A stretch of DNA of 64,000 bases, from positions 652,736,001 to 652,800,000 of the forward strand of contig NC_067398.1 of assembly GCF_016432865.1 (NCBI RefSeq), written 5' to 3'. The notes below the pieces were generated by a model. It searched no databases. It was not told the DNA's origin and saw nothing but the letters and a program-made list of their open reading frames with translations. Source of the DNA: Antechinus flavipes (taxonomy: Eukaryota). Positions 6,601-28,800 of the stretch are shown piece by piece. The translations under genes were made by a program, and so were the position numbers. Each line of letters begins with the position of its first letter. The first letter of the stretch is position 1.

Positions 6601-9600
6601 CATGAATCCACGGTTCCCAGAAAGTTAATCCATGGTTAAGACCTTAAGGGTGGAGAAGCCCTGTTCTACTCTTTGGCCACCAACCCGGAGACACTGGACT
6701 TGAGCAAGAGGCAAAAACCTGTGTGGCTCCAGCAATGACAATTCTGTGCATAGGAGGAAGCAGAGTGGAGGAGTTACCTTCCTCCAGGCCCATTTCCTCC
6801 GACTTCCCACACCCCGGAGCATGGCTGGCTTCTGGGCCCGAAGCTTCGGCAACAGATCCCGCATCAGCAGATTGGTGAGAACCTAAGGCCAAAGGAAGGC
6901 AGGGGTAACCGCTCTACGGCTGGAGAAGCCTGGCTCCCCCCAGCAGTCCCTCCCTGGGCCACAGCCCCTACAAGCAGAACCCCCCCGCCATTTATCTCAC
7001 AAACCTCTGCATCTGTGCCCAAAAGGAGGCTGTCGACTCCATAAATGCCTTTCTCCTGCCTGTAAGACTTCACTGCCTCCAGAAAGGCCTCCGAGTCGGG
7101 GGAGTCTCTTCTCTGTAAAACTGAAGCCCATTTTATCCTCATTCTTCCACGCTTTGGTCTGCACGTGGCAGTCAGCTCAAGGGGGTTGCTATTGGCCCTG
7201 AAATCCTACCAAGGACATCTTCCTGATCCTCCTGGCCAGCAACCTCCTTTGATCTCAAAGAGCCTTGTGTCCCCCCCCCCCCCACATCATCAGCATTAAT
7301 TTTCTGTTTGTGTCCTATCTTCCTGGACTATGAGCTCCATGAGGTCTGGCCACTACAGCTTGCAAAGGCATTGATAAAAGGAAGCAAAGAAGATGACCAA
7401 GGGCTGGAGTCTGACACAGGAAGATTGACTGAGGGACCTGGGAATGTTTAACCTGGAGAAGAGAAGACTGGGGGCGAGTTTGGGGTATTTGAGTATTTGA
7501 AGGGCTGCTCTGTGGATCATTAGACTTGTTCTGTTTGACCCCAGAGGTGGAAGTTGTAAAAAGATAATTTAGGCCGGATGTCAAGAAAAACTTTCTAACC
7601 ACAAGAGCTGTGCTGAAAATAGAATGTGTTACCTCAAGTGGTACATAATACAGTCTAGAATTTTCCAAGCAAGTAAAGTTCAATTGTTTAAAGATATTAC
7701 CTTTTCCCCCACCCCCAATAATTTTTAAAAATTTAAGACATTTGGTCAGAATCCAAGCCCTCCCTCATTTTACAGACGGGGAAACTGAGGCTAAGTGACT
7801 AGTCCATCATGGATAGTAAATAACACAGCTGGGGAAGCAAGGAGTCTAGATCACAGGTTTTGAATTGGAGAGGACCTCAGTGGCTCTTCCACTTGACCCA
7901 TTCTCAAAGGAATCCCCACCTCTGATTGGAGATCTCCAAAGAGGGACTGGCTGATCACTTGTTAGGCATACGAGAGTGGGATTCCCAGATCTGTCATTAT
8001 CTGTGTGACTTTGACTATGTCACTTATCCTGTCTTTGTCTCAGTTTCCTCATCTGTAAAATGGGGGGGATACTAGATGGTTTCTGAAGACCCTTTTAGTC
8101 ATTCAGTCCATGATTCTGTGATTTCTCTGACCTTAGATGAAGTAGGTGCTGAATACCATGTCATCTGTTGTTGAATGCACTCCATAGTGACAGAGCACTT
8201 TCCTGAGAGACTGTCCCATCTATCAGGTGTATGTGAAAGGAAAGAATTCAAGGACTTGTCCAGACTTTGTCTGTGACAGCAGGGACCTACTCACGGGACA
8301 CAGACATAATTCTGACTGAGCCCCTCAGAGAATTCATCTCACTTGGGCTGGGCCCAGACTTACCTGTGCCCCGGCGCCGAATCCCATCTCTCAGGACAGA
8401 CTTCCAGCTGTCCTGGGATTCTACCGTGTCTGTGCACAAGCAAAGGGGCTGTCGGAAAGGGTGACAGAGATAGATGGGAAATCCCAAAGGGGGCTCGATG
8501 ATTGGATCTGGATCTTGAATGAGATGGTTCCCTGGAAAAGAGAAAGATTTTACCTTTGTCTTAAAGTCAAGAAAAAAGCTTGTCTTCAATTTCTTGAAGG
8601 ATATTCTTGATTTGTCGGAGACAAATCAAGAATATCCTTATCTACAAAGGATGGGGAATTGAGGGCCATTTTGCTCGAAAAATTGGCCTTTTATCTCTCT
8701 CCTTATGACAAGGGATCTCTAAGCCTCAGAATGCTCTTCTCTTGAGGCTGCTGAGGGAATCTAGAACCAAGGAAAGGGATTTGGAAACCTTAGGGGCACC
8801 ATATGAATGTGAGCAGTAGTGATTATTCTCTAGTAGGAAAGTCTTACCTGTTGAACTATGATAGAGACATTCCTTCCATGAGGTCACTAGTTTGTAACCA
8901 GTCAAAGCAACAAACCCCTGTGGCTCGTCGCCACATTTCTGTTCCTAGAAAAATACCCAAAGGATCTATTCAGAAATTTTCTCCACTACAAGTTATTCTC
9001 ACCCAAATTTAGGAAGATTAGCAGCTAATGAAGCAAGAACTCCCCAAAATATCCACTCATGAAACACTTTCAATGAAGCATCACAGAGGCATGGTGCTTT
9101 AGCACGGAGCTTGGAATCAGAAGACCCAATTCTAGTCGCAGACCTGAACGAAGGATTATAATTTTCTGTGTCATCTTCAGCAAATCACTCCCCAATCTCT
9201 AGATCTCAGTTTTCTCGTCTGTAAAATGAAGGGGTTGAATTAATTGGTCTAAACCCTGCCAGCTCCAACATTTTTTGCTACTGGACCCAGATAGCTCTGG
9301 AGGAAAGAGTAAAGGTAGTAACTTTGCACAGCCCTCCCTCACTTAAATCCATTGATTTGTAATAAATCACCTTCAAGAATGAAGGACAAATCACAATAAC
9401 AATAACAATTTCCCACTCATGTACACTACATTCCAGCCCTTTATTTTCCAGCCTTAGGGTACACATACCCTAAAGTGTCCCACCTCTGGATTTTTCCTCC
9501 TAGAACACCTTTGTAAATTCCTATCAATCTTTTAAAACTCAAATGCCACCTCCTGGAGGAAATTTTTATAAATTCTTCCCAGTTGGAAACGATTTCAGTC

Positions 9601-12600
9601 TTTATACGGTACTCTGGCATCAAGAACTCAATGTTAGTTTATACATCTTTCCAATGCTTTCATCATTTATTTTTAAAATAATTACACTCTGGCTAGACTC
9701 TAACCATCATGAAGGCAGAGAGCATCTTCTATTGAAGCTTCTCATCGCCTCCATTCCTCCAGATCCCAAGATCATAGAGTTAGAGCTAAATGGGGCCTGA
9801 AAGGTCCTACTCATTCATTTTACAGATAAGGAAACTGAGATGCAGGGATGGGAGAATGGCTTGAGCAAGGCTACTCAACAAATTAGTTATTGGTCCAAGA
9901 CTTGAACTTGAATCTAGGACTAAAACTAAAGATGGTAGATGTCCTGCCCAAAATCACACAGATGGAAAATGGGAGACTCAAGATTTCAACTCAGGTCCTC
10001 TACCTCAAATCCACTCTTAAAGGATTAATTAAATATTTGCCAATTTTAAATACAAGATTTGGTGTTCTGTTAACCTAAAGTTTCTATGGAGATAAGGTGA
10101 CTTGGAAATGGGGAGTGGAAGGGGATGTATGGGCAAGCCAGCTTATGTCTAGTGAAAAATGGCAGTTACAAAGATGGTGGGAGAAGCAAACTTCTTATCT
10201 GGCTGAGCCCCTCTGAGGGGCTCAGTCAGAATTATGTCTGTGTCGCATGAGTAGGTCCCTGCTGTCACAGACAAAGTCTGGACAAGTCCCTGAATTCTTC
10301 CACTTGATGGATGGGACAGTCTCTCAGGAAAGTCCTCAGGAAATAATTTGGAATTAATTATACTCTATGAACCTCTCTTTCCTACCCTGAAGTGCCCATA
10401 ACAATGAGGGTACTGCTGAGAGCATGTGGTACCCTCCACCTTTGATATAATGACATACTTTAAGCATCTATATCTTAATTGAGGTTAAATTTCTTATCAA
10501 TATTATTCAAACCAAGAAAAATCCATTAAGTAATTATCATGTATATGATACTCTACTAGGTGCTGGGAATAAAAAAAAGTGAAACATTACTTGCCCTCAA
10601 AGAGTTTATAGTCTATTGAATGTGCTGGTAGAGTCATACTATGTACATAAATTAAGCATAATATAAGGTAATTTGAAGAAGGAAGGTGTGCAAATTAATA
10701 GGAGAAAGGGAAGAAAAAAGAAGGCTTCATGGAGAGTGTGGTCCTTTCATTGAGTCTTGAAGGAAGACAAAGATTCTGGGAAAAAGATGAGGGGAGGCAT
10801 TATAAGCATGAGAGATGGATTTTACAAATGCAACAGTGTTCACTTCAGGGCATTCCCTAGGATTCAAGTTTGACTAGAATGGAAAATGAAAGGAGTGGAA
10901 TAAAATTAATAATATAAAATAGAATAGCATAGAATAAAATAAAATTAGGCTAGAAAAGTCTCCTCCTCCTTAAACAGTAGAGAGCTTCTGGAGGTCTTTG
11001 TATAGGGGAGTATATGGGCTCCAAATGCCATGTTGGTTTGAGTTACTGAATACGTGGCTCAATACAACTCCACAGAATGCTCAGTCAGTATGAACTGACC
11101 TTCTGCATAAGGCCATTCCCAGTCCCCTCAGCTGCTGGTACTTTCCTTTCCATGGTTACCTAGTGTTTGACATGTATATGAACTGTGTGGACTTATATAC
11201 ATACTATTACTTTTCCCATTAGAATATAAGCTCCTTTAAGACAAGGACTATTTCCTCTTATCTTCGTATGTACCTGGCTTATAGTAAACATTTAATAAAT
11301 GTTTATTAATTGATTTTTGGGGACTGCAAAATTCAAAATCCTTCAGAAATTATTTTAAATGGCAGAGAACTTCTAGAAAAACCAACATGACCTTTCAAAA
11401 TAGAAAATACAACCAATGACAAGAACTATTCAAATTTTCTCTTCTGTAAAATGAGGGGATTGATCAATGAGTTCTAACAGTTCTCCAGGTTCTGACTTTC
11501 TAAGATCCTGCGAGTGTTCATGTCTTCCTCATATTGGATAAGAGGAATCTAGGAACACAATGCCTGAGGCAAGGAGAAGGGGATATCTATACAATTAGTA
11601 CAAAAACCTAATGAGAGTCATAATTCATAGGATTAGAAGATAATTTATAGGTTTACAAAGTGCTTGTCTCACAAAACTGTATCAGGGCCCTCTAACTACG
11701 GCCCGCAGGCCAGATTTGGCAGCTGAGGCCATTTATCCCCCTCACCCAGGGCTATGAAGTTTCTTTATTTAAAGGCCCACAAAACAAAGTTTTTGTTTTT
11801 ACTATAGTCCGGCCCTCCAACAGTCTGAGGGACAGTGAACTGGCCCCCTATTTAAAAAGTTTGAGGACCCCTGAATTGTTGATGGTATAAGTGTGGTTTT
11901 CCCATTTTATTGACCAGGAAAGTGAAGCTTCCAGAGATTGACTTGCTCAGGGGGACACAATTGGCAATATCAGAGCTAAAACTCAAAGCCAGTGTGTAAA
12001 GTCAGAAATCAGAACTGGAAGGGAGATTAGAGGCCAGAAGTTTCCCAGAGAGGAGGTCCTCCTTCCTTTTCTCTCATCAAAGAGGATGGAGGATGGATAT
12101 TGGAGGGTTTCTCCCAGATTGTCCACTATTTAAAGATGTCACACAGAGAATCCTCTTCAGTATTTCCCACCCGGCTACTTTCTTGAATGCCATCATTTCT
12201 AGAAACTCATTATTCTGCAAGATAAAATCAACCTGGAAATTCCTATCTTTTTAGATCATTTTCTTCCATGACTACATGACTTCATGGCCCTCCTCCTTCT
12301 AGCTTCTTCCCCAGTTTGAATGTGAATTTTCAGAGGGCAGACAGCATCTTATGCCTTTGTTTGTGTCTCCAGCACTTGGCAAGGTCCCTGGCACATAAAA
12401 AGTACTTGATAAATTCATATTCACTCTGACTTCTACTCTGACATGGCTTCCCCAAGGTCATACCAGTAGAAGCTACCTCTAGCTCTATGTTTAGCATTCT
12501 TCCTTCTATTATTTCTGTAAAAAACTGCAAAAGGTCTAGAAAGAAATGTTCAACTTGACCTAAGCATTGGGATTAGGACATTGGAAGTGGCAGATTTGAA

Positions 12601-15600
12601 TGGAAACAATGGAAATAAGGCAGACACTTGTACCTCTTTACTGCCAAACCACTCTAGAGATGAGTCTCCACGTAGGATCCAGTAGCTTTCCTTCCACTTC
12701 GGGGAGTTCCCTTGCAAGTGGGTCAGAATCCCCTCATGCATCACGGCCCGGGGAGGCTTCTGAGAATAGAATAGAATCAAAAATGGCATTGCACCAAGTG
12801 ACATCTCTTTAAGAAAAAAAAAATCCAGCACCACACAGAGAGATGCCTTCCATTCTGTTCCCCCACATTCACCAGACTCCCTGGGGCTGCCACAGCTGCA
12901 CACCAGTGACTTTCCAAACACATGGAGGCTATTAGTGTGTGTGTGTTTAAAGACAGCTGAGCTAAGGACAGTGCATCTGCCATCTCTCCAGAGATCTGAG
13001 GCAGAAGCAGCAGTGCATGAAGGTACAGAACTTTCACCTGAAACTTTAAACATCCATTCCCACAACCGAAGGACAGCCCTTTGTGAGGTAATGGTTGATT
13101 TATATGCTTTTGGGGGGAGTACCCTAAAAGGGGAGGGAAGGAGGGTCTTGGTTCTCCCTCCCACCAAGGTGTTAGTTCTCAAAGAACCGCCATTTGGGGT
13201 CTTCCTGAGTCAACCTTTCCATTTGGAGGCAGGGGACTCCCATCACATCATAAGCTACACAAATATCATCTCCAACAACTTGCCCTAATCATGGAAAGAA
13301 AAGAACATTAGTGATACCAGTACTAGGTATCTACCCCAGAAGAGATCAAAGGAAAAGAANNNNNNNNNNNNNNNNNNNNNNNNNNNNNNNNNNNNNNNNN
13401 NNNNNNNNNNNNNNNNNNNNNNNNNNNNNNNNNNNNNNNNNNNNNNNNNNNNNNNNNNNNNNNNNNNNNNNNNNNNNNNNNNNNNNNNNNNNNNNNNNNN
13501 NNNNNNNNNNNNNNNNNNNNNNNNNNNNNNNNNNNNNNNNNNNNNNNNNNNNNNNNNNNNNNNNNNNNNNNNNNNNNNNNNNNNNNNNNNNNNNNCTTTA
13601 CAGTGACAAAGAGTTAAAACCTAACGGGGTGGCTAAAGAAACTATGGTATACTAATGTGTCATAAGATTGAAATATCACTTTCCTAGAAGAAATGATGAA
13701 AATGATAGTTTCAGAGGAAATTGGACAAGAGTGAAATGAGCAGAATAGGAAAACAAATCATATGACAACAACATTATAGAGGAAAATATCTTTGAAAGGC
13801 TTGAGAACATTGAGCCAAAATAATGATAAAGCTGGAGTTCACAGGCCTGAACATGCTGCTTACCTCTTGCCAGAGAAAAATGATGGGTTTAAAATGCAAA
13901 ATGAGACAAGCATAGTCCAGCTAAACAAATCCCCACAATGGCCGTGTCAAAACAAAACACATTTTTGGACACGGCCATTGTGGGAATTTCTTTTGCTGGT
14001 CTATGCTTATTTGTTTGAAGACCTTTTTTCTTTTTTGTGGTTCATCGGGTAGGGAGCAGTGGAAAGATAGATAAGAAATACTTGTAAAAAATGTTTTTAA
14101 GCTAAAAAAAAAAAAGGAATAGAATAAGTACAACTAGACACAAAATAAGAGAGTTCAGCCCAGAAGAGGGCATTCTCTTATCTTCTAAACCTCTACCATT
14201 TGAGGATGGATTTGGAGCTCCCTTACTCAGTGCTCCCTTTTCCTCTCCATGTCAGGAGACTGTGGTGGGGCTCTATGTGATCTACAGTTTCTGTGTGCTT
14301 GAAGAACCCTCGACTCAGAAAAGAGGCCCCTGGCAGAAAACCACACAGCCTGTGGCATTCTCAGGGTCGGTGTCAAAGCTCCCCTGAACCAGCACCTACT
14401 TCACTCTTCAATAGCTGGAAGCCTGGCTCTCCCTGGGGCATCAGTTCTCTTGAGATTTGCCTCAGAAAGGCCGCAGCAAGCTGCCTTCGGTAATGCGGCA
14501 TGAAGTCGTTCAGGAAAGCTTCTGTCCGGCCTGGGAAAGGATAAAAGAACAAGCACAAACACGAGCTGGTCTCCTTTCCCTCCAGCTGATCTCATTTTAT
14601 TCTGCAAGAGGTGGAAGTCCCCTCATAGGTCCCAGAGGCCATGCCCTGGGATCCAGCTTGCTTTTGACGGGTCTGCAAAACACACCTGAAGCGTGATCTT
14701 TAAACATAGTCTGAATTAGGGAAGCTAGTGATGGGCAGAACACCTTCCACCTGGAATCTGGAGGCGTTGGGTGCATGTGAAAGATAATTGTTCCCATGTA
14801 GCCTCCATCCCCAATTGTTTGTGGTCCCACAGAGATCTGAGAGGTTGGATGAAGGTGACTGGAGTTCAGACCTTTCTTCTTAGTATCCTCGAGAAGCACC
14901 ATGAGAGCCAGGCAAAGATGNNNNNNNNNNNNNNNNNNNNNNNNNNNNNNNNNNNNNNNNNNNNNNNNNNNNNNNNNNNNNNNNNNNNNNNNNNNNNNNN
15001 NNNNNNNNNNNNNNNNNNNNNNNNNNNNNNNNNNNNNNNNNNNNNNNNNNNNNNNNNNNNNNNNNNNNNNNNNNNNNNNNNNNNNNNNNNNNNNNNNNNN
15101 NNNNNNNNNNNNNNNNNNNNNNNNNNNNNNNNNNNNNNNNNNNNNNNNNNNNNNNNNNNNNNNNNNNNNNNNNNNNNNNNNNNNNNNNNNNNNNNNNNNN
15201 NNNNNNNNNNNNNNNNNNNNNNNNNNNNNNNNNNNNNNNNNNNNNNNNNNNNNNNNNNNNNNNNNNNNNNNNNNNNNNNNNNNNNNNNNNNNNNNNAATT
15301 CATTTACCTAGCTACTTGGAATCACAAAGTATTTAGGAAAGGAGAGGAAAATCACACACACACACACAAAAAAAAACAATTTTACAAAGAGTAAAGCTGG
15401 AGAAAGGAAGGAAAACAAACATTTATTAAGCATCTACTATGTGTTGAGCACTATGCTAAGCACTTTATAAATATTCTCTCATTTGGCCCTCACAGCATCC
15501 CCATGAGATAAATGCTATTATTATTTCCAATTTACAGTTGAGAAAACTGAAATAGAGATTAAGTGACTTGCCAGGATCATACAACCCGTAAAAATGTGAT

Positions 15601-21834: not shown

Positions 21835-24800
21835 CTACAAAATGGAATGCTTCTCAAATGGAATGGTCAACTCTTTTGCGGCGGCCTCATCCAGGAACCA
21901 GCAGAGCCGCCCGGTGTGGGGCTGCACAAGCGCAGCAGGAAGTGGATTCTCTTCGTCACCTTCCAGGATGCGCTGTTTCCCCATCCCAAGAAAAAGCTCA
22001 TGAGGCCTAAGCCCATCCCCAACTCCCATTCATTTCCCAGGAGAGGGAACCACGAGGGCACCCCAGGGTCCTTCCCCCAACCTGGATCACTCAGACATGG
22101 GAGATCCTAGGACATTGCCATACCAGAGTAAGAGGAACTTACTCTGAACAGCGCGTCTGTTCTCATCCTTCTAGGGACATCCCACCTACAGGTGTGCTCC
22201 CAACTCCCTCTCCTCATTACTATCGCAGAAACAAACTGTGACTGTTACCTTCAAAACAGCTGCTTTGCTTTCTCCAGTAGCCACAAACACAACCATTCGT
22301 GCTGCGTTCAGTACAGGCAGAGTGAGGGTCACCCTTTCAGGGGGTGGCTTTGGAGAGTCACTGATGGGGGCCACAATCTTTTCCTTTTCCTAGGGAAAAC
22401 GAGTCCAAATAGCCAGAAGAAAGCAGATGGTACCAGAGGAAATAATCCACAGACCTCAAACAAACTCTGAGTTTGGAAAGCTCCCAACCCAAGCACGCCC
22501 AGAGCCTGTAAAGGGGCTGATCAGCTCCAACCTCATCTTGGTGCCCCGGGCATCCTGGAGGTCACTGCCCAGCCCTAGGCGTAGCTCAGTAGATAAGCCC
22601 AGATGAGTCCAAGTACCAAAGCTGGCTTACCTGCAGGAGGGGGTGATCAGGGAAAAGGGAACACGTGTGCCCATCAGGTCCGATGCCCAAAATCAGGAGG
22701 TCAAAAACTGGGATCGTGTCACCCTGAAAAGCCTAAGGGAGAGAAACAAAGGGTCAGCCCCACTCCAGTTAGATGCCCAGCCAGCTCTGCCAAGTGAGAG
22801 AGTCTGATTCAAGGCCTGTGGTGCCCCAGGAGCAGAGAGTGTGGAAAGATAAGGGGCTGAGGCGCTTCTGAGCTTCCTGAATAGGATTTTCTCTGAGGGG
22901 CCCAAGAGCATATCTCAGACCTCGCACGTGAGACTTATAATCCTGCAGCCTGGGACCTGTGCAGTAATGACGCCTGTTTTACAGGGGAGGAAACCCTCAA
23001 ATGGGGCAAAAGAACTTGTTGTGGAGCTAAGACCCAACAGGGGCAATATACGAATTCCTCAGCACCAGAGCCCACCATCCAACCCACTGACATATCTAGC
23101 CTTTGAGGGCCAGGTCAAGAAGAGAGGATGTGGAGCCCAGGCAGGCTGTGCTGCTGCCTCACAACCAGGGCTGTGGGCAACCTGGTCACCTTAGTCTTTA
23201 TCAAAGAAGCAGCTGTCAGTTTTATTTATCAGTTCCTTTCCCCAGTTTATTTATTTCAATTGTTTAGATTATTCCCTCCTTTATGTATCTTTTTGGGGTT
23301 TAAGTTGTTTATTCTCTAGTTTTTTTTAACTGCATACTCAGCTCATTGATTTCCTTCTATTTTGTTAAAGCATATTTTTTATACATTTAATTTTTTTCTC
23401 TAGATCTACTTTAGCTACAATCCCCAAATTTTCTTATCAATTTCATTTTCTTTCACATGATTATGATGATGATTTGATTTTAACCCAAATATTCTTCAGA
23501 ATATCATTGTTAAATCTTAATTCCAATGGAAGGTCTTTTTCCTGGCTACCTTTAAAAATTACTGTTTGGCATAAAAACTATGAAATTAACTACTATATTT
23601 TTCAAAGTTTTAAAAAGGGGGGATTTCTCTTGAGGTAATCTATGGATTTAACCAAACTGTATTTAATTTGGCTATTCAAAAGTTCTGGGCTTTTTTCCTG
23701 AAGTGTGGTATTCTAGGTTTTTAATATATCTCTTAGGAAAGATGTGATTTTTAAGTTACCTCTGTACTTTTAAGTACTCAGTACTTGTGCCCCTATTTTT
23801 TTAAGTTTCAATATAAACTCCTGGAAAACAGGGACTGTTTCCCAGCATCCAACACAAAGCAAGAATTAACAGAGGCTTGCTTATTACAGGTTTGTTGGTT
23901 TGACTTTATGTGTACTTTTAGCTTTTATTTCTCTTTTGCCAACGTTTCTTCTACTTCTGCTTTTTAAAAAAATTCCAAATCTGTATTTTCCCATTTGAGA
24001 ACTTTTATTCTTTTAAGAGAGAGTCACCACCACCATATTTCCTATGGAGCAATACCTTACTGGGGAAAAGGGCCAAGATCCAATCTGGATCTGAGTAAAA
24101 CTAAACTAAAAATCAAAAACAAAAATAAAAATCAGTTCAGATAAGTCCCAGAGTTTCTCTGAAGTGCCTAAATCCAAAGAATTAGAATGAAAGCAGGAAG
24201 TAGGTTGCAAGAATCTCTGGAGAGTTGTTCTAGGGAAATTTGTACAGGGAGTGCCAGGGAGGCAACTGGTTGGTTCAACTTGTTTCCTCAAATCCCTGAA
24301 GTACAAGTTTACAAAATTATGTGCACAGGTTAGGCTTATACAGACTTCCAATACTGAGTAAGATCTCCAGTACATCAATTGTCTAATGTCTAGTATCATG
24401 ATAATTATAAGATGGTTTTTTTCTTATCATTTTGTGAATTCTATACTAATTATTCCAGATTTGGCTCATTACTTTATTTCTTTTGACATCTCTTGGCCAG
24501 GATCTTGTTCATTACCTGCCTCACTACTACTGAATTTCAGACTGTAAACAATCATTTTCCCATTCGTACCCATGTCCCCAAGCAGAGTCCTCTGGGGAAA
24601 GGAAGCCCAAGAGAAGTAACAAGAAGGGTACAAGGGCCTTTCCTGGGCTCCCTACTACTCACTTCTTGAAGTTTCTCTGCGTAGTCTGAGGCAGCCTCTT
24701 CCACTGGGAGTGCAGGGTTAATGGTGATTACCTGGCTCTCTGGGATAGGCAGTTTGGAAAGAAGATGAGTCTACATCAGATAAAGAAAAAAATTCAGCTT

Positions 24801-27800: not shown

Positions 27801-28387
27801 GCAGGGAAAGCGCTTAATAAATGCCCTTTTATGCCTGCCTTAGGACCAGAAGACCATAACCCGCACCGTGGGTCTCACAAGCCCCCAAGAGGCCATCGCG
27901 AAGACTCCTTGTATCCAAGGCTCTCTTTTTACCCCAGGGCTCCTAATATTCCCACAGGCCCTTTCCCGGCCTCCAGGGAGCACCGAGGAGCAAATCCGTG
28001 GGTTCCCCGCCCCCCTTGTAAAGAAAGCACCCTCCCTCCTTTGGGAGCCAGATCCCTCCCCCTCTCCCCCTGTCCCCCCCGCACCCGGTACAGGCCGAAC
28101 GTGCTGTCCGCGTGGTCAAAGGGCACGAGGCGCTCGTCGCAGAATCCTAATGTCCAGTGCGCTGGGGCTGCGGGCCCGGCGGAGGCGGCGGCCGCGGGCA
28201 GCTCTTGGGCCAGCAGCTGCACCAGGCTCCCTCCCGAGAGCCCGAGTGAGAAGCGAGCCCCATCCCCGGCGCCCCCGGCCCCGGCCCGGCTCTGCGCCGC
28301 CCGCTGCACCACCAGTTGCGCCAACGACACGCCCAGTTCCTGCGGGCTCGGGAACACCGAGATGAGGCGGGAGCCTGACCCCGGCAT
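21835..28387 (-). CDS. PGLS: 6-phosphogluconolactonase, 263 aa, 5 exons
   Basis: Exons 28085-28387 ([12 protein letters not shown]...LGLSGGSL...[18 protein letters not shown]), 24663-24770, 22631-22732 ([19 protein letters not shown]), 22249-22389 ([18 protein letters not shown]), 21835-21972 (WFLDEAAA...KHSIL-TAG); 792 nt, all GT-AG; ATG in GCCGCG-ATG context. Confidence 0.97.
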
Positions 28388-28800
28388 CGCGGCGGTGACG
28401 GCGGCGGCGGCGGCGGGGGTGCGGGCAGGGGAGCCGGCGGCGCGCGGCGTGGGGCGCGGCCTCAGCGCCCGGGCGGAAGTGGCTCCAGTTTGGGCGGAAG
28501 GGGCCCCACAACGCTTCCGCACTATTAGCGGCAGCACTGAGCAGGCATAGATTTCTGCAGCTCTTGAGAGGATCCCAAGGATCGTCTCTAACCTTCATTT
28601 AACAAGGGCTTGGAGGCGCACTTCAAGTGACCGGCGGAGCCGAGCGCCTTCTTGGGACCCCCTTCCTCCACATCGCACTTAGCCCGAGGCTCCTCTCCCT
28701 TACACCTCCCCCCACCCCATTTACTCTCCTCCTCCGTCCCCTCCCAGTCGGGTGGGTTCTTTTCTGAATAAAGTTGGAAAAGCAGACCGAGAACCCTAGA
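27400..28800 (-). promoter_or_regulatory. CpG island / housekeeping promoter of PGLS
   Basis: Dense CpG over exon 1; ETS/GABP-type CGGAAG motifs at ~28474-28480, ~28494-28500 and 28514-28520 with adjacent GC boxes; (CGG)6 at 28399-28416 in the presumptive 5' UTR. Confidence 0.8.

What the first reader, a model, noticed from the sequence alone, without database searches (positions are those of the whole stretch)
8197..10333. Young non-TE inverted repeat brackets exactly NIBAN3 exons 4-5: candidate circRNA / exon-skipping switch
Seen: 8197-8330 and 10211-10333 are reverse complements (123 aligned nt, 5 substitutions, one 11-nt indel). I do not recognise the arm as a SINE, LINE or MITE and saw no third copy in the window. 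The loop holds only exon 4 (8848-8944) and exon 5 (8364-8531), which encode the C-terminal part of the PH domain. The downstream arm starts 34 nt after the exon 5 donor. Established: complementary intronic sequences flanking exons promote back-splicing and skipping, and long dsRNA is an ADAR substrate. Inference: a 265-nt exon 4-5 circRNA could form, and skipping both exons (265 nt, not a multiple of 3) would frameshift and trigger NMD. That would be a lineage-specific RNA-structure switch on a B-cell-associated gene. The arms could also mediate DNA inversion of the two exons.
Basis: partly seen in the sequence, partly recalled or inferred. Interest (0 to 1): 0.72.

Follow-up and report, generated by a model that had tools for sequence, protein, structure and literature searches.

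The report
Backwards intron copy brackets two exons
A 127-base piece of NIBAN3 intron 5 was copied backwards into intron 3 in this dasyurid lineage, so exons 4-5 sit between complementary arms; this is a DNA-copying scar, not a transposon, it has drifted like ordinary intron, and no RNA data could be obtained to show that it alters splicing.

Summary
Arms 8193-8330 and 10211-10337 are reverse complements (121 matches, 6 mismatches, one 11-nt gap; E 4e-46). No third copy occurs in the window. They enclose only NIBAN3 exons 4 and 5 (minus strand).

Comparison with Tasmanian devil and fat-tailed dunnart settles the origin. The intron-5 arm is ancestral and collinear in both. The intron-3 arm is missing from an identical empty site in both. 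The insert has no target-site duplication, no poly(A) and no terminal repeats. It has a 9-nt stutter, an 8-nt filler and 5 extra bases that complete a perfect 23-nt palindrome. This indicates a local template-switch (templated) inverted duplication, not a transposon pair.

It is not very young. The arms differ by 4.7%, about as much as either differs from the devil orthologue. Changes are spread evenly over both arms, so nothing suggests selection for pairing.

In silico the arms pair (-238 kcal/mol; 123 bp in the fold of a 2.35-kb pre-mRNA segment). Skipping exons 4-5 would shift the frame, with a stop at codon 17 of exon 6. It is an ordinary member of a known mutation class that happens to bracket exons.

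The parts
8193..8330 (-). Source arm: ancestral segment of NIBAN3 intron 5, starting 34 nt after the exon 5 donor
   Evidence: Collinear orthologue with both flanks in devil (L003 10867-11004, 95.7%) and dunnart (L002 10036-10167, 87.7%). In Gracilinanus the homology runs from the exon 5 flank across the 8330 boundary until an N-run starts.
10211..10337 (-). Derived arm: inverted copy of the source arm inserted in intron 3, 1,267 nt upstream of the exon 4 acceptor; carries an 11-nt deletion relative to the source
   Evidence: Absent at the orthologous site in dunnart (L002 about 8094-8101) and in both devil assemblies (L003 8584-8591, L004 8576-8583); flanks align on both sides.
10338..10345 (.). 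8-nt filler at the outer junction; with the arm's first bases it forms a 9-nt direct 'stutter' (10323-10331 and 10335-10343)
   Evidence: Not present in the empty sites of devil or dunnart; repeat read directly from the sequence.
10203..10225 (.). Perfect 23-nt palindrome at the inner junction; bases 10206-10210 differ from the ancestral target and mirror the end of the arm (snap-back or quasi-palindrome correction)
   Evidence: (D4).
8848..8944 (-). NIBAN3 exon 4 (97 nt), inside the loop
8364..8531 (-). NIBAN3 exon 5 (168 nt), inside the loop
12634..12759 (-). NIBAN3 exon 3 (126 nt, ends in phase 0), upstream of the loop
7005..7120 (-). NIBAN3 exon 6 (116 nt, starts in phase 1); read after exon 3 it stops at codon 17

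Best explanation
The repeat is the scar of one local DNA-copying error in this dasyurid lineage. The error happened after the lineage split from those of the Tasmanian devil and the fat-tailed dunnart. About 127 nt of NIBAN3 intron 5, lying just after the exon 5 donor, was copied in reverse orientation into intron 3, 1.9 kb away. It replaced about 14 nt of the target. The junctions show short microhomology, a 9-nt stutter, 8 nt of filler and a 5-nt snap-back. This points to replication or repair template switching (FoSTeS/MMBIR or polymerase-theta-type templated insertion), not transposition. Shown: the presence/absence pattern, the direction of copying and the junction anatomy. Inferred: the enzymology. 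Since then both arms have drifted at about the intron rate. The pre-mRNA can in principle form a roughly 125-bp stem that loops out exons 4-5. Some back-splicing into a 265-nt circle, or frameshifting skipping of exons 4-5, is therefore likely at a low level as a by-product. Nothing indicates that it is a selected switch.
For: The intron-5 arm has orthologues in devil and dunnart, while the intron-3 arm is missing from an identical empty site in both. Two independent devil assemblies agree. No other copy occurs in 227 kb of window plus four marsupial loci, and the only other match in the window is a 20-nt piece at the junction. No target-site duplication, poly(A) or terminal inverted repeats are present; stutter, filler and palindrome are read at the junctions. 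Differences between the arms, polarised with the outgroups by reading the alignment: about 3 on the source arm and about 3, plus the 11-nt deletion, on the copy. Divergences: arm-arm 4.7%, source-devil 4.3%, copy-devil 4.7%, introns window-devil 6.7%. Duplex energy is -238 kcal/mol against -58 +/- 7 for shuffles. In the MFE fold of 2,351 nt the arms form 123 pairs and the exon 5 donor stays unpaired. Inverted repeats of 30-40 nt suffice for circularisation in minigenes (PMC4201285).
Against: The counts behind the neutrality argument are tiny (6 differences), so weak constraint cannot be excluded. Error-prone synthesis at the time of copying could account for some differences and make the event younger than it looks. 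Genome-wide copy number of the arm was not measured.
Confidence: 0.75

Rival explanations
1. Selected RNA-structure switch: the stem is maintained because it drives a functional exon 4-5 circRNA, or an NMD-coupled skipping event that tunes NIBAN3 in B cells.
For: Strong predicted long-range stem bracketing only exons 4-5. Skipping shifts the frame, with an early stop in exon 6. The repeat has persisted through a divergence of about 4.7%. Flanking complementary sequences promote back-splicing (PMC4201285, PMC8516420).
Against: Both arms accumulated changes at about the intron rate, including an 11-nt deletion, and there are no compensatory changes. The sister lineages lack the repeat and keep the same gene structure. 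No expression data were obtained.
Confidence: 0.08
2. Two oppositely oriented insertions of a low-copy interspersed repeat (SINE/MITE).
For: Such pairs are the usual source of intronic complementary sequences (PMC8516420). Copy number was checked in only 227 kb.
Against: The source arm sits collinearly in three dasyurids, and the didelphid sequence crosses its inner boundary. There are no target duplications, poly(A) or terminal repeats. The copy is about as close to this locus's source arm (4.7%) as the devil orthologue is. No other copy was found. Rfam gave no hit.
Confidence: 0.03
3. Same end product but RNA-templated: a fragment of NIBAN3 intron 5 RNA (pre-mRNA or lariat) was reverse-transcribed and captured at a double-strand break in intron 3.
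For: The source is transcribed intron. The insert has no target duplication and no poly(A), as described for templated sequence insertions (my own knowledge, not checked here).
Against: The stutter and the snap-back palindrome at the junctions fit a DNA polymerase switching templates nearby. The source is only 1.9 kb away on the same molecule.
Confidence: 0.1
4. Assembly artefact: one arm is a mis-joined or duplicated read segment.
Against: The arms differ by 6 substitutions and an 11-nt gap and have unique junctions. Artefactual duplicates are normally identical. Runs of several organisms hold 29-86% of the region's 31-mers, though which words they hold is unknown.
Confidence: 0.03

Closest known systems
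Template-switch / templated inverted duplications (FoSTeS/MMBIR, foldback and templated insertions at breaks; short-range template switching in ape genomes, PMC7954356; yeast templated inverted insertions, PMC11724301)
   Same: An inverted copy of nearby unique sequence with the source retained. It has microhomology, filler and stutter at the junctions, a palindrome at one end and no transposon hallmarks.
   Different: At 127 nt copied over 1.9 kb, it is longer and more distant than the 5-34 bp inverted insertions reported in the yeast abstract. Here the two copies happen to lie in different introns.
Intronic reverse-complementary sequences that promote back-splicing (ZKSCAN1/HIPK3 minigenes, PMC4201285; TE dimers in opossum, rodents and primates, PMC8516420)
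   Same: Complementary arms in the two introns flanking the exons. The longest perfect runs, read from the alignment, are 42 and 34 nt, at or above the 30-40 nt shown to suffice.
   Different: The arms are unique sequence, not SINEs. In opossum the dominant dimers are SINE1 elements. No back-splice junction has been observed here.
Other local inverted duplications noted in this same genome by this scan (s1-204770 REG exon 5, s1-183202, s1-189057, s1-189897)
   Same: The same size class and the same reading (backwards copy of nearby intron). One of them also brackets an exon.
   Different: These are AI notes on other loci and were not checked here.

Membership tests
Template-switch / templated inverted duplication | The copy is derived: absent from the orthologous site in outgroups while the source is present | tested here: met
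   empty site in dunnart and two devil assemblies; source arm collinear in all.
Template-switch / templated inverted duplication | Inverted orientation, source nearby on the same molecule and retained | tested here: met
   1,880 nt between the arms, reverse complement.
Template-switch / templated inverted duplication | Junctions with microhomology, filler or stutter and no target-site duplication | tested here: met
   8-nt filler, 9-nt stutter, 5-nt snap-back giving a 23-nt palindrome, about 14 nt of target replaced. The exact breakpoints are ambiguous within a few bases.
Transposable element pair (SINE/MITE) | Further copies elsewhere in the genome | tested here: inconclusive
   None in 227 kb. 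A genome-wide count is not possible with these tools.
Transposable element pair (SINE/MITE) | Target-site duplications and terminal structure (TIR or poly(A)) | tested here: not met
Transposable element pair (SINE/MITE) | Both copies are insertions relative to an older empty site | tested here: not met
   The source arm is orthologous in three dasyurids, and didelphid homology crosses its inner boundary.
circRNA-promoting intronic complementary pair | Complementary arms of at least 30-40 nt in the introns on either side of the exons | tested here: met
   threshold from PMC4201285.
circRNA-promoting intronic complementary pair | Back-splice junction (exon 5 donor to exon 4 acceptor) in RNA | not testable with these tools
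All listed runs were contigs only.
circRNA-promoting intronic complementary pair | Loss of the circle when one arm is removed | not testable with these tools
   Needs a minigene. Devil and dunnart are natural arm-less controls.
ADAR-edited long intronic dsRNA | Clustered A-to-G mismatches in RNA reads over the arms | not testable with these tools
   No reads could be laid.
Niban family gene, paralogue NIBAN3 | Sequence match of the exons to Niban proteins, with named NIBAN3 orthologues as best hits | tested here: met
   PGLS-like exons lie nearby on the same strand; the NIBAN3-PGLS neighbourhood is recalled from the human map, not tested.

The most novel reading that the evidence does not exclude
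A single non-transposon template-switch duplication was enough to create a new exon 4-5 circRNA and/or an NMD-targeted skipped isoform of NIBAN3 in this lineage. Devil and dunnart serve as natural arm-less controls. This would be a clean natural experiment on how circRNAs are born without transposons.
Probability: 0.3. Interest if true: 0.5.

Novelty: new member of a known kind. Interest (0 to 1): 0.3.

Why it matters
Most complementary sequences credited with circRNA birth are young transposons. Here the origin of a strong exon-bracketing pair is resolved to one dated, non-transposon copying event, and two related species lack it. That makes the locus a usable natural test of whether such a pair alone creates back-splicing or skipping. 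The earlier notes of this scan suggest that such local inverted copies recur in this genome, which may be worth a systematic count. As it stands it is an ordinary neutral-looking scar.

Tried and rejected
No depth, junction or editing data were obtained. After that, no query to any search tool contained 8029-8071; queries ran beside it (8072 onward, or up to 8028). One local script used the whole window file as a BLAST subject. One search masked the places.
2. A word search with the 100-aa ORF over exon 5 and the arm edge found nothing. Raw ORFs of vertebrate contigs are evidently not in that collection.
3. The wombat protein P0001 had no gene on record.
4. The Gracilinanus locus L001 has an N-run starting 47 nt after the exon 5 donor. 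It hides the didelphid counterpart of the arm, and it was left unfilled.
5. Rfam gave no family on the arms, only a sub-threshold miRNA-like hit on the intron-4 hairpin.
6. Literature: no paper links NIBAN3 or FAM129C exons to a circRNA.
7. The transposon-pair and assembly-artefact readings were considered and rejected, as given under rivals.
Exons were searched one by one by reference. The joined search step was left out.
Full report
OBSERVATION. The inverted repeat is real. The repeat finder reports two adjoining blocks: 8242-8330/10211-10299 (89 nt, 97%) and 8193-8229/10301-10337 (37 nt, 92%). Gapped blastn joins them into one alignment of 138 columns with 120 identities and one 11-nt gap, E 3.6e-46. 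A global alignment gives 121 matches and 6 mismatches. There is no third copy in the window. Among only ten inverted pairs with E below 1e-10 in the 64 kb, this is the most similar once its gap is set aside, and it has just two copies.

GENE CONTEXT. The gene runs on the minus strand with canonical splice sites.
- Exon 3 is 12634-12759, exon 4 is 8848-8944, exon 5 is 8364-8531 and exon 6 is 7005-7120.
- Exon 5 matches Niban 2 residues 148-192 of PDB 7ctp. Exon 3 matches the start of the Pfam PH model.
- The best full-length relatives are named NIBAN3 in wombat, koala, dunnart and devil.
- By eye, the exon 4-5 peptide differs at 2 residues from dunnart NIBAN3 and at 4 from devil NIBAN3. The window is therefore a dasyurid that is neither of these two.
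I did not verify that.
- Exons were searched one at a time by reference.

ORIGIN. I fetched the NIBAN3 loci of the fat-tailed dunnart (L002), the Tasmanian devil in two assemblies (L003, L004) and Gracilinanus (L001).
- The intron-5 arm (8193-8330) is collinear with its flanks in devil (95.7%) and dunnart (87.7%).
- In Gracilinanus the homology runs from exon 5 across the arm's inner boundary until an N-run begins. I left the N-run alone.
- The intron-3 arm (10211-10337) is absent from the orthologous site in dunnart and in both devil assemblies. Both flanks align, and the empty sites of the two species are identical.
- The intron-3 arm is therefore a derived, inverted copy of the intron-5 segment, made after this lineage separated from those of devil and dunnart.

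JUNCTIONS. About 14 nt of ancestral target were replaced by about 140 nt (10206-10345).
- At the outer end there is an 8-nt filler (10338-10345). With the first bases of the arm it makes a 9-nt direct stutter (10323-10331 and 10335-10343).
- At the inner end, five bases (10206-10210) differ from the ancestral target and mirror the arm's end. This gives a perfect 23-nt palindrome (10203-10225).
- Short matches between target and source (up to 6 nt at one end, 3 nt at the other) are possible microhomologies. The exact breakpoints are ambiguous by a few bases.
- There is no target-site duplication, no poly(A) tail and no terminal inverted repeat. No other copy occurs in 227 kb of window plus loci.
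- This is the anatomy of replication or repair template switching and templated insertion (PMC7954356, PMC11724301), not of transposition. The enzymology is inference.

AGE AND SELECTION.
- Substitution divergences are: arm-arm 4.7% (6/127), source arm-devil 4.3%, copy-devil 4.7%. For introns 3-5 as a whole they are window-devil 6.7% and window-dunnart 8.3%.
- I polarised the differences with the two outgroups by reading the alignment. About three changes lie on the source arm. About three, plus the 11-nt deletion, lie on the copy.
- The event therefore dates to a large fraction of the time since the split from the devil lineage, roughly 0.3 to 1 times that time given six events. Error-prone synthesis at the moment of copying could make it younger.
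- The arms have drifted symmetrically with no compensatory change and no homogenisation. This is what neutral intron would do, although the numbers are small.

WHAT IT COULD DO.
- As RNA the two arms form a duplex of -238 kcal/mol, against -58 +/- 7 for shuffled partners.
- In the minimum-energy fold of the 2,351-nt pre-mRNA segment they make 123 pairs and leave the exon 5 donor unpaired.
- Read from the alignment, the longest uninterrupted matches are 42 and 34 nt. That is at or above the 30-40 nt that suffices for circularisation in minigenes (PMC4201285).
- The loop holds exon 4, intron 4, exon 5 and 1.27 kb of intron 3, and no other exon.
- Exons 4+5 total 265 nt. Exon 3 ends in phase 0 and exon 6 expects phase 1, so skipping gives a stop at codon 17 of exon 6. 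That position makes it a candidate for nonsense-mediated decay.
- In opossum and eutherians such pairs are mostly young SINEs (PMC8516420). Here the pair is unique sequence.
- All of this shows capacity, not activity. No back-splice, skipping or editing evidence exists.
- The five annotated dunnart isoforms all keep exons 4-5. The dunnart lacks the intron-3 arm, so this is only the expected baseline.

VERDICT. The functional reading is plausible by mechanism but untested, and the evolutionary pattern gives it no support. The most likely account is a neutral template-switch scar that may leak some circRNA or skipped transcript.

Earlier notes of this scan describe several similar backwards copies in the same genome, one of them bracketing a REG exon (s1-204770, s1-183202, s1-189057, s1-189897, s1-211375). 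Those notes are leads, not evidence. They do suggest that this is one member of a recurrent class.

Noticed in passing
window 8597-8639 (intron 4, inside the loop): A perfect hairpin with a 20-bp stem and a 3-nt loop (-28 kcal/mol, z -6.1). Both stem halves are invariant in devil and dunnart while the loop differs in each. About 4 changes would be expected in 40 nt on this tree. Rfam gives only a sub-threshold miRNA-like hit (E 0.45). It could be a constrained intronic hairpin, or a palindrome kept perfect by template switching.
   Followed up: partly
L003 8486-9112 (devil intron 3; the same in L004): The devil carries its own rearrangement at the same place. The 286 bp matching window 10136-10545 (without the arm) is inverted. 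Next to it lies a roughly 200-nt element with terminal inverted repeats that has another copy at L003 20955-21157, and looks like a hAT-type MITE by my recollection of such ends. A short stretch matching window 10556-10577 is also duplicated in inverted orientation. This part of intron 3 seems prone to rearrangement in dasyurids.
   Followed up: partly
window about 22186-22374 and 27929-28537, minus strand: ORFs that look like exons of 6-phosphogluconolactonase (PGLS), judged by eye. That would fit the NIBAN3-PGLS neighbourhood known from human. No search was run on them.
   Followed up: no
protein P0030 (bilby NIBAN3 isoform X2): This annotated isoform lacks exactly the 42 residues of exon 3 (126 nt, in frame). 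An exon of the PH domain is thus annotated as skipped in another marsupial without any link to the repeat studied here.
   Followed up: no
L001 (Gracilinanus) and protein P0002: The locus holds 6,348 N, including a run starting 47 nt after the exon 5 donor. The 534-aa gene model departs from the other NIBAN3 proteins right after exon 5, probably because of these gaps.
   Followed up: no
window 7762-7795, 9159-9235, 9809-9885: Fragments of a common marsupial SINE-like repeat lie in both orientations in introns 3 and 5. They give only weak cross-intron pairs (25-34 nt) next to the 127-nt pair.
   Followed up: no
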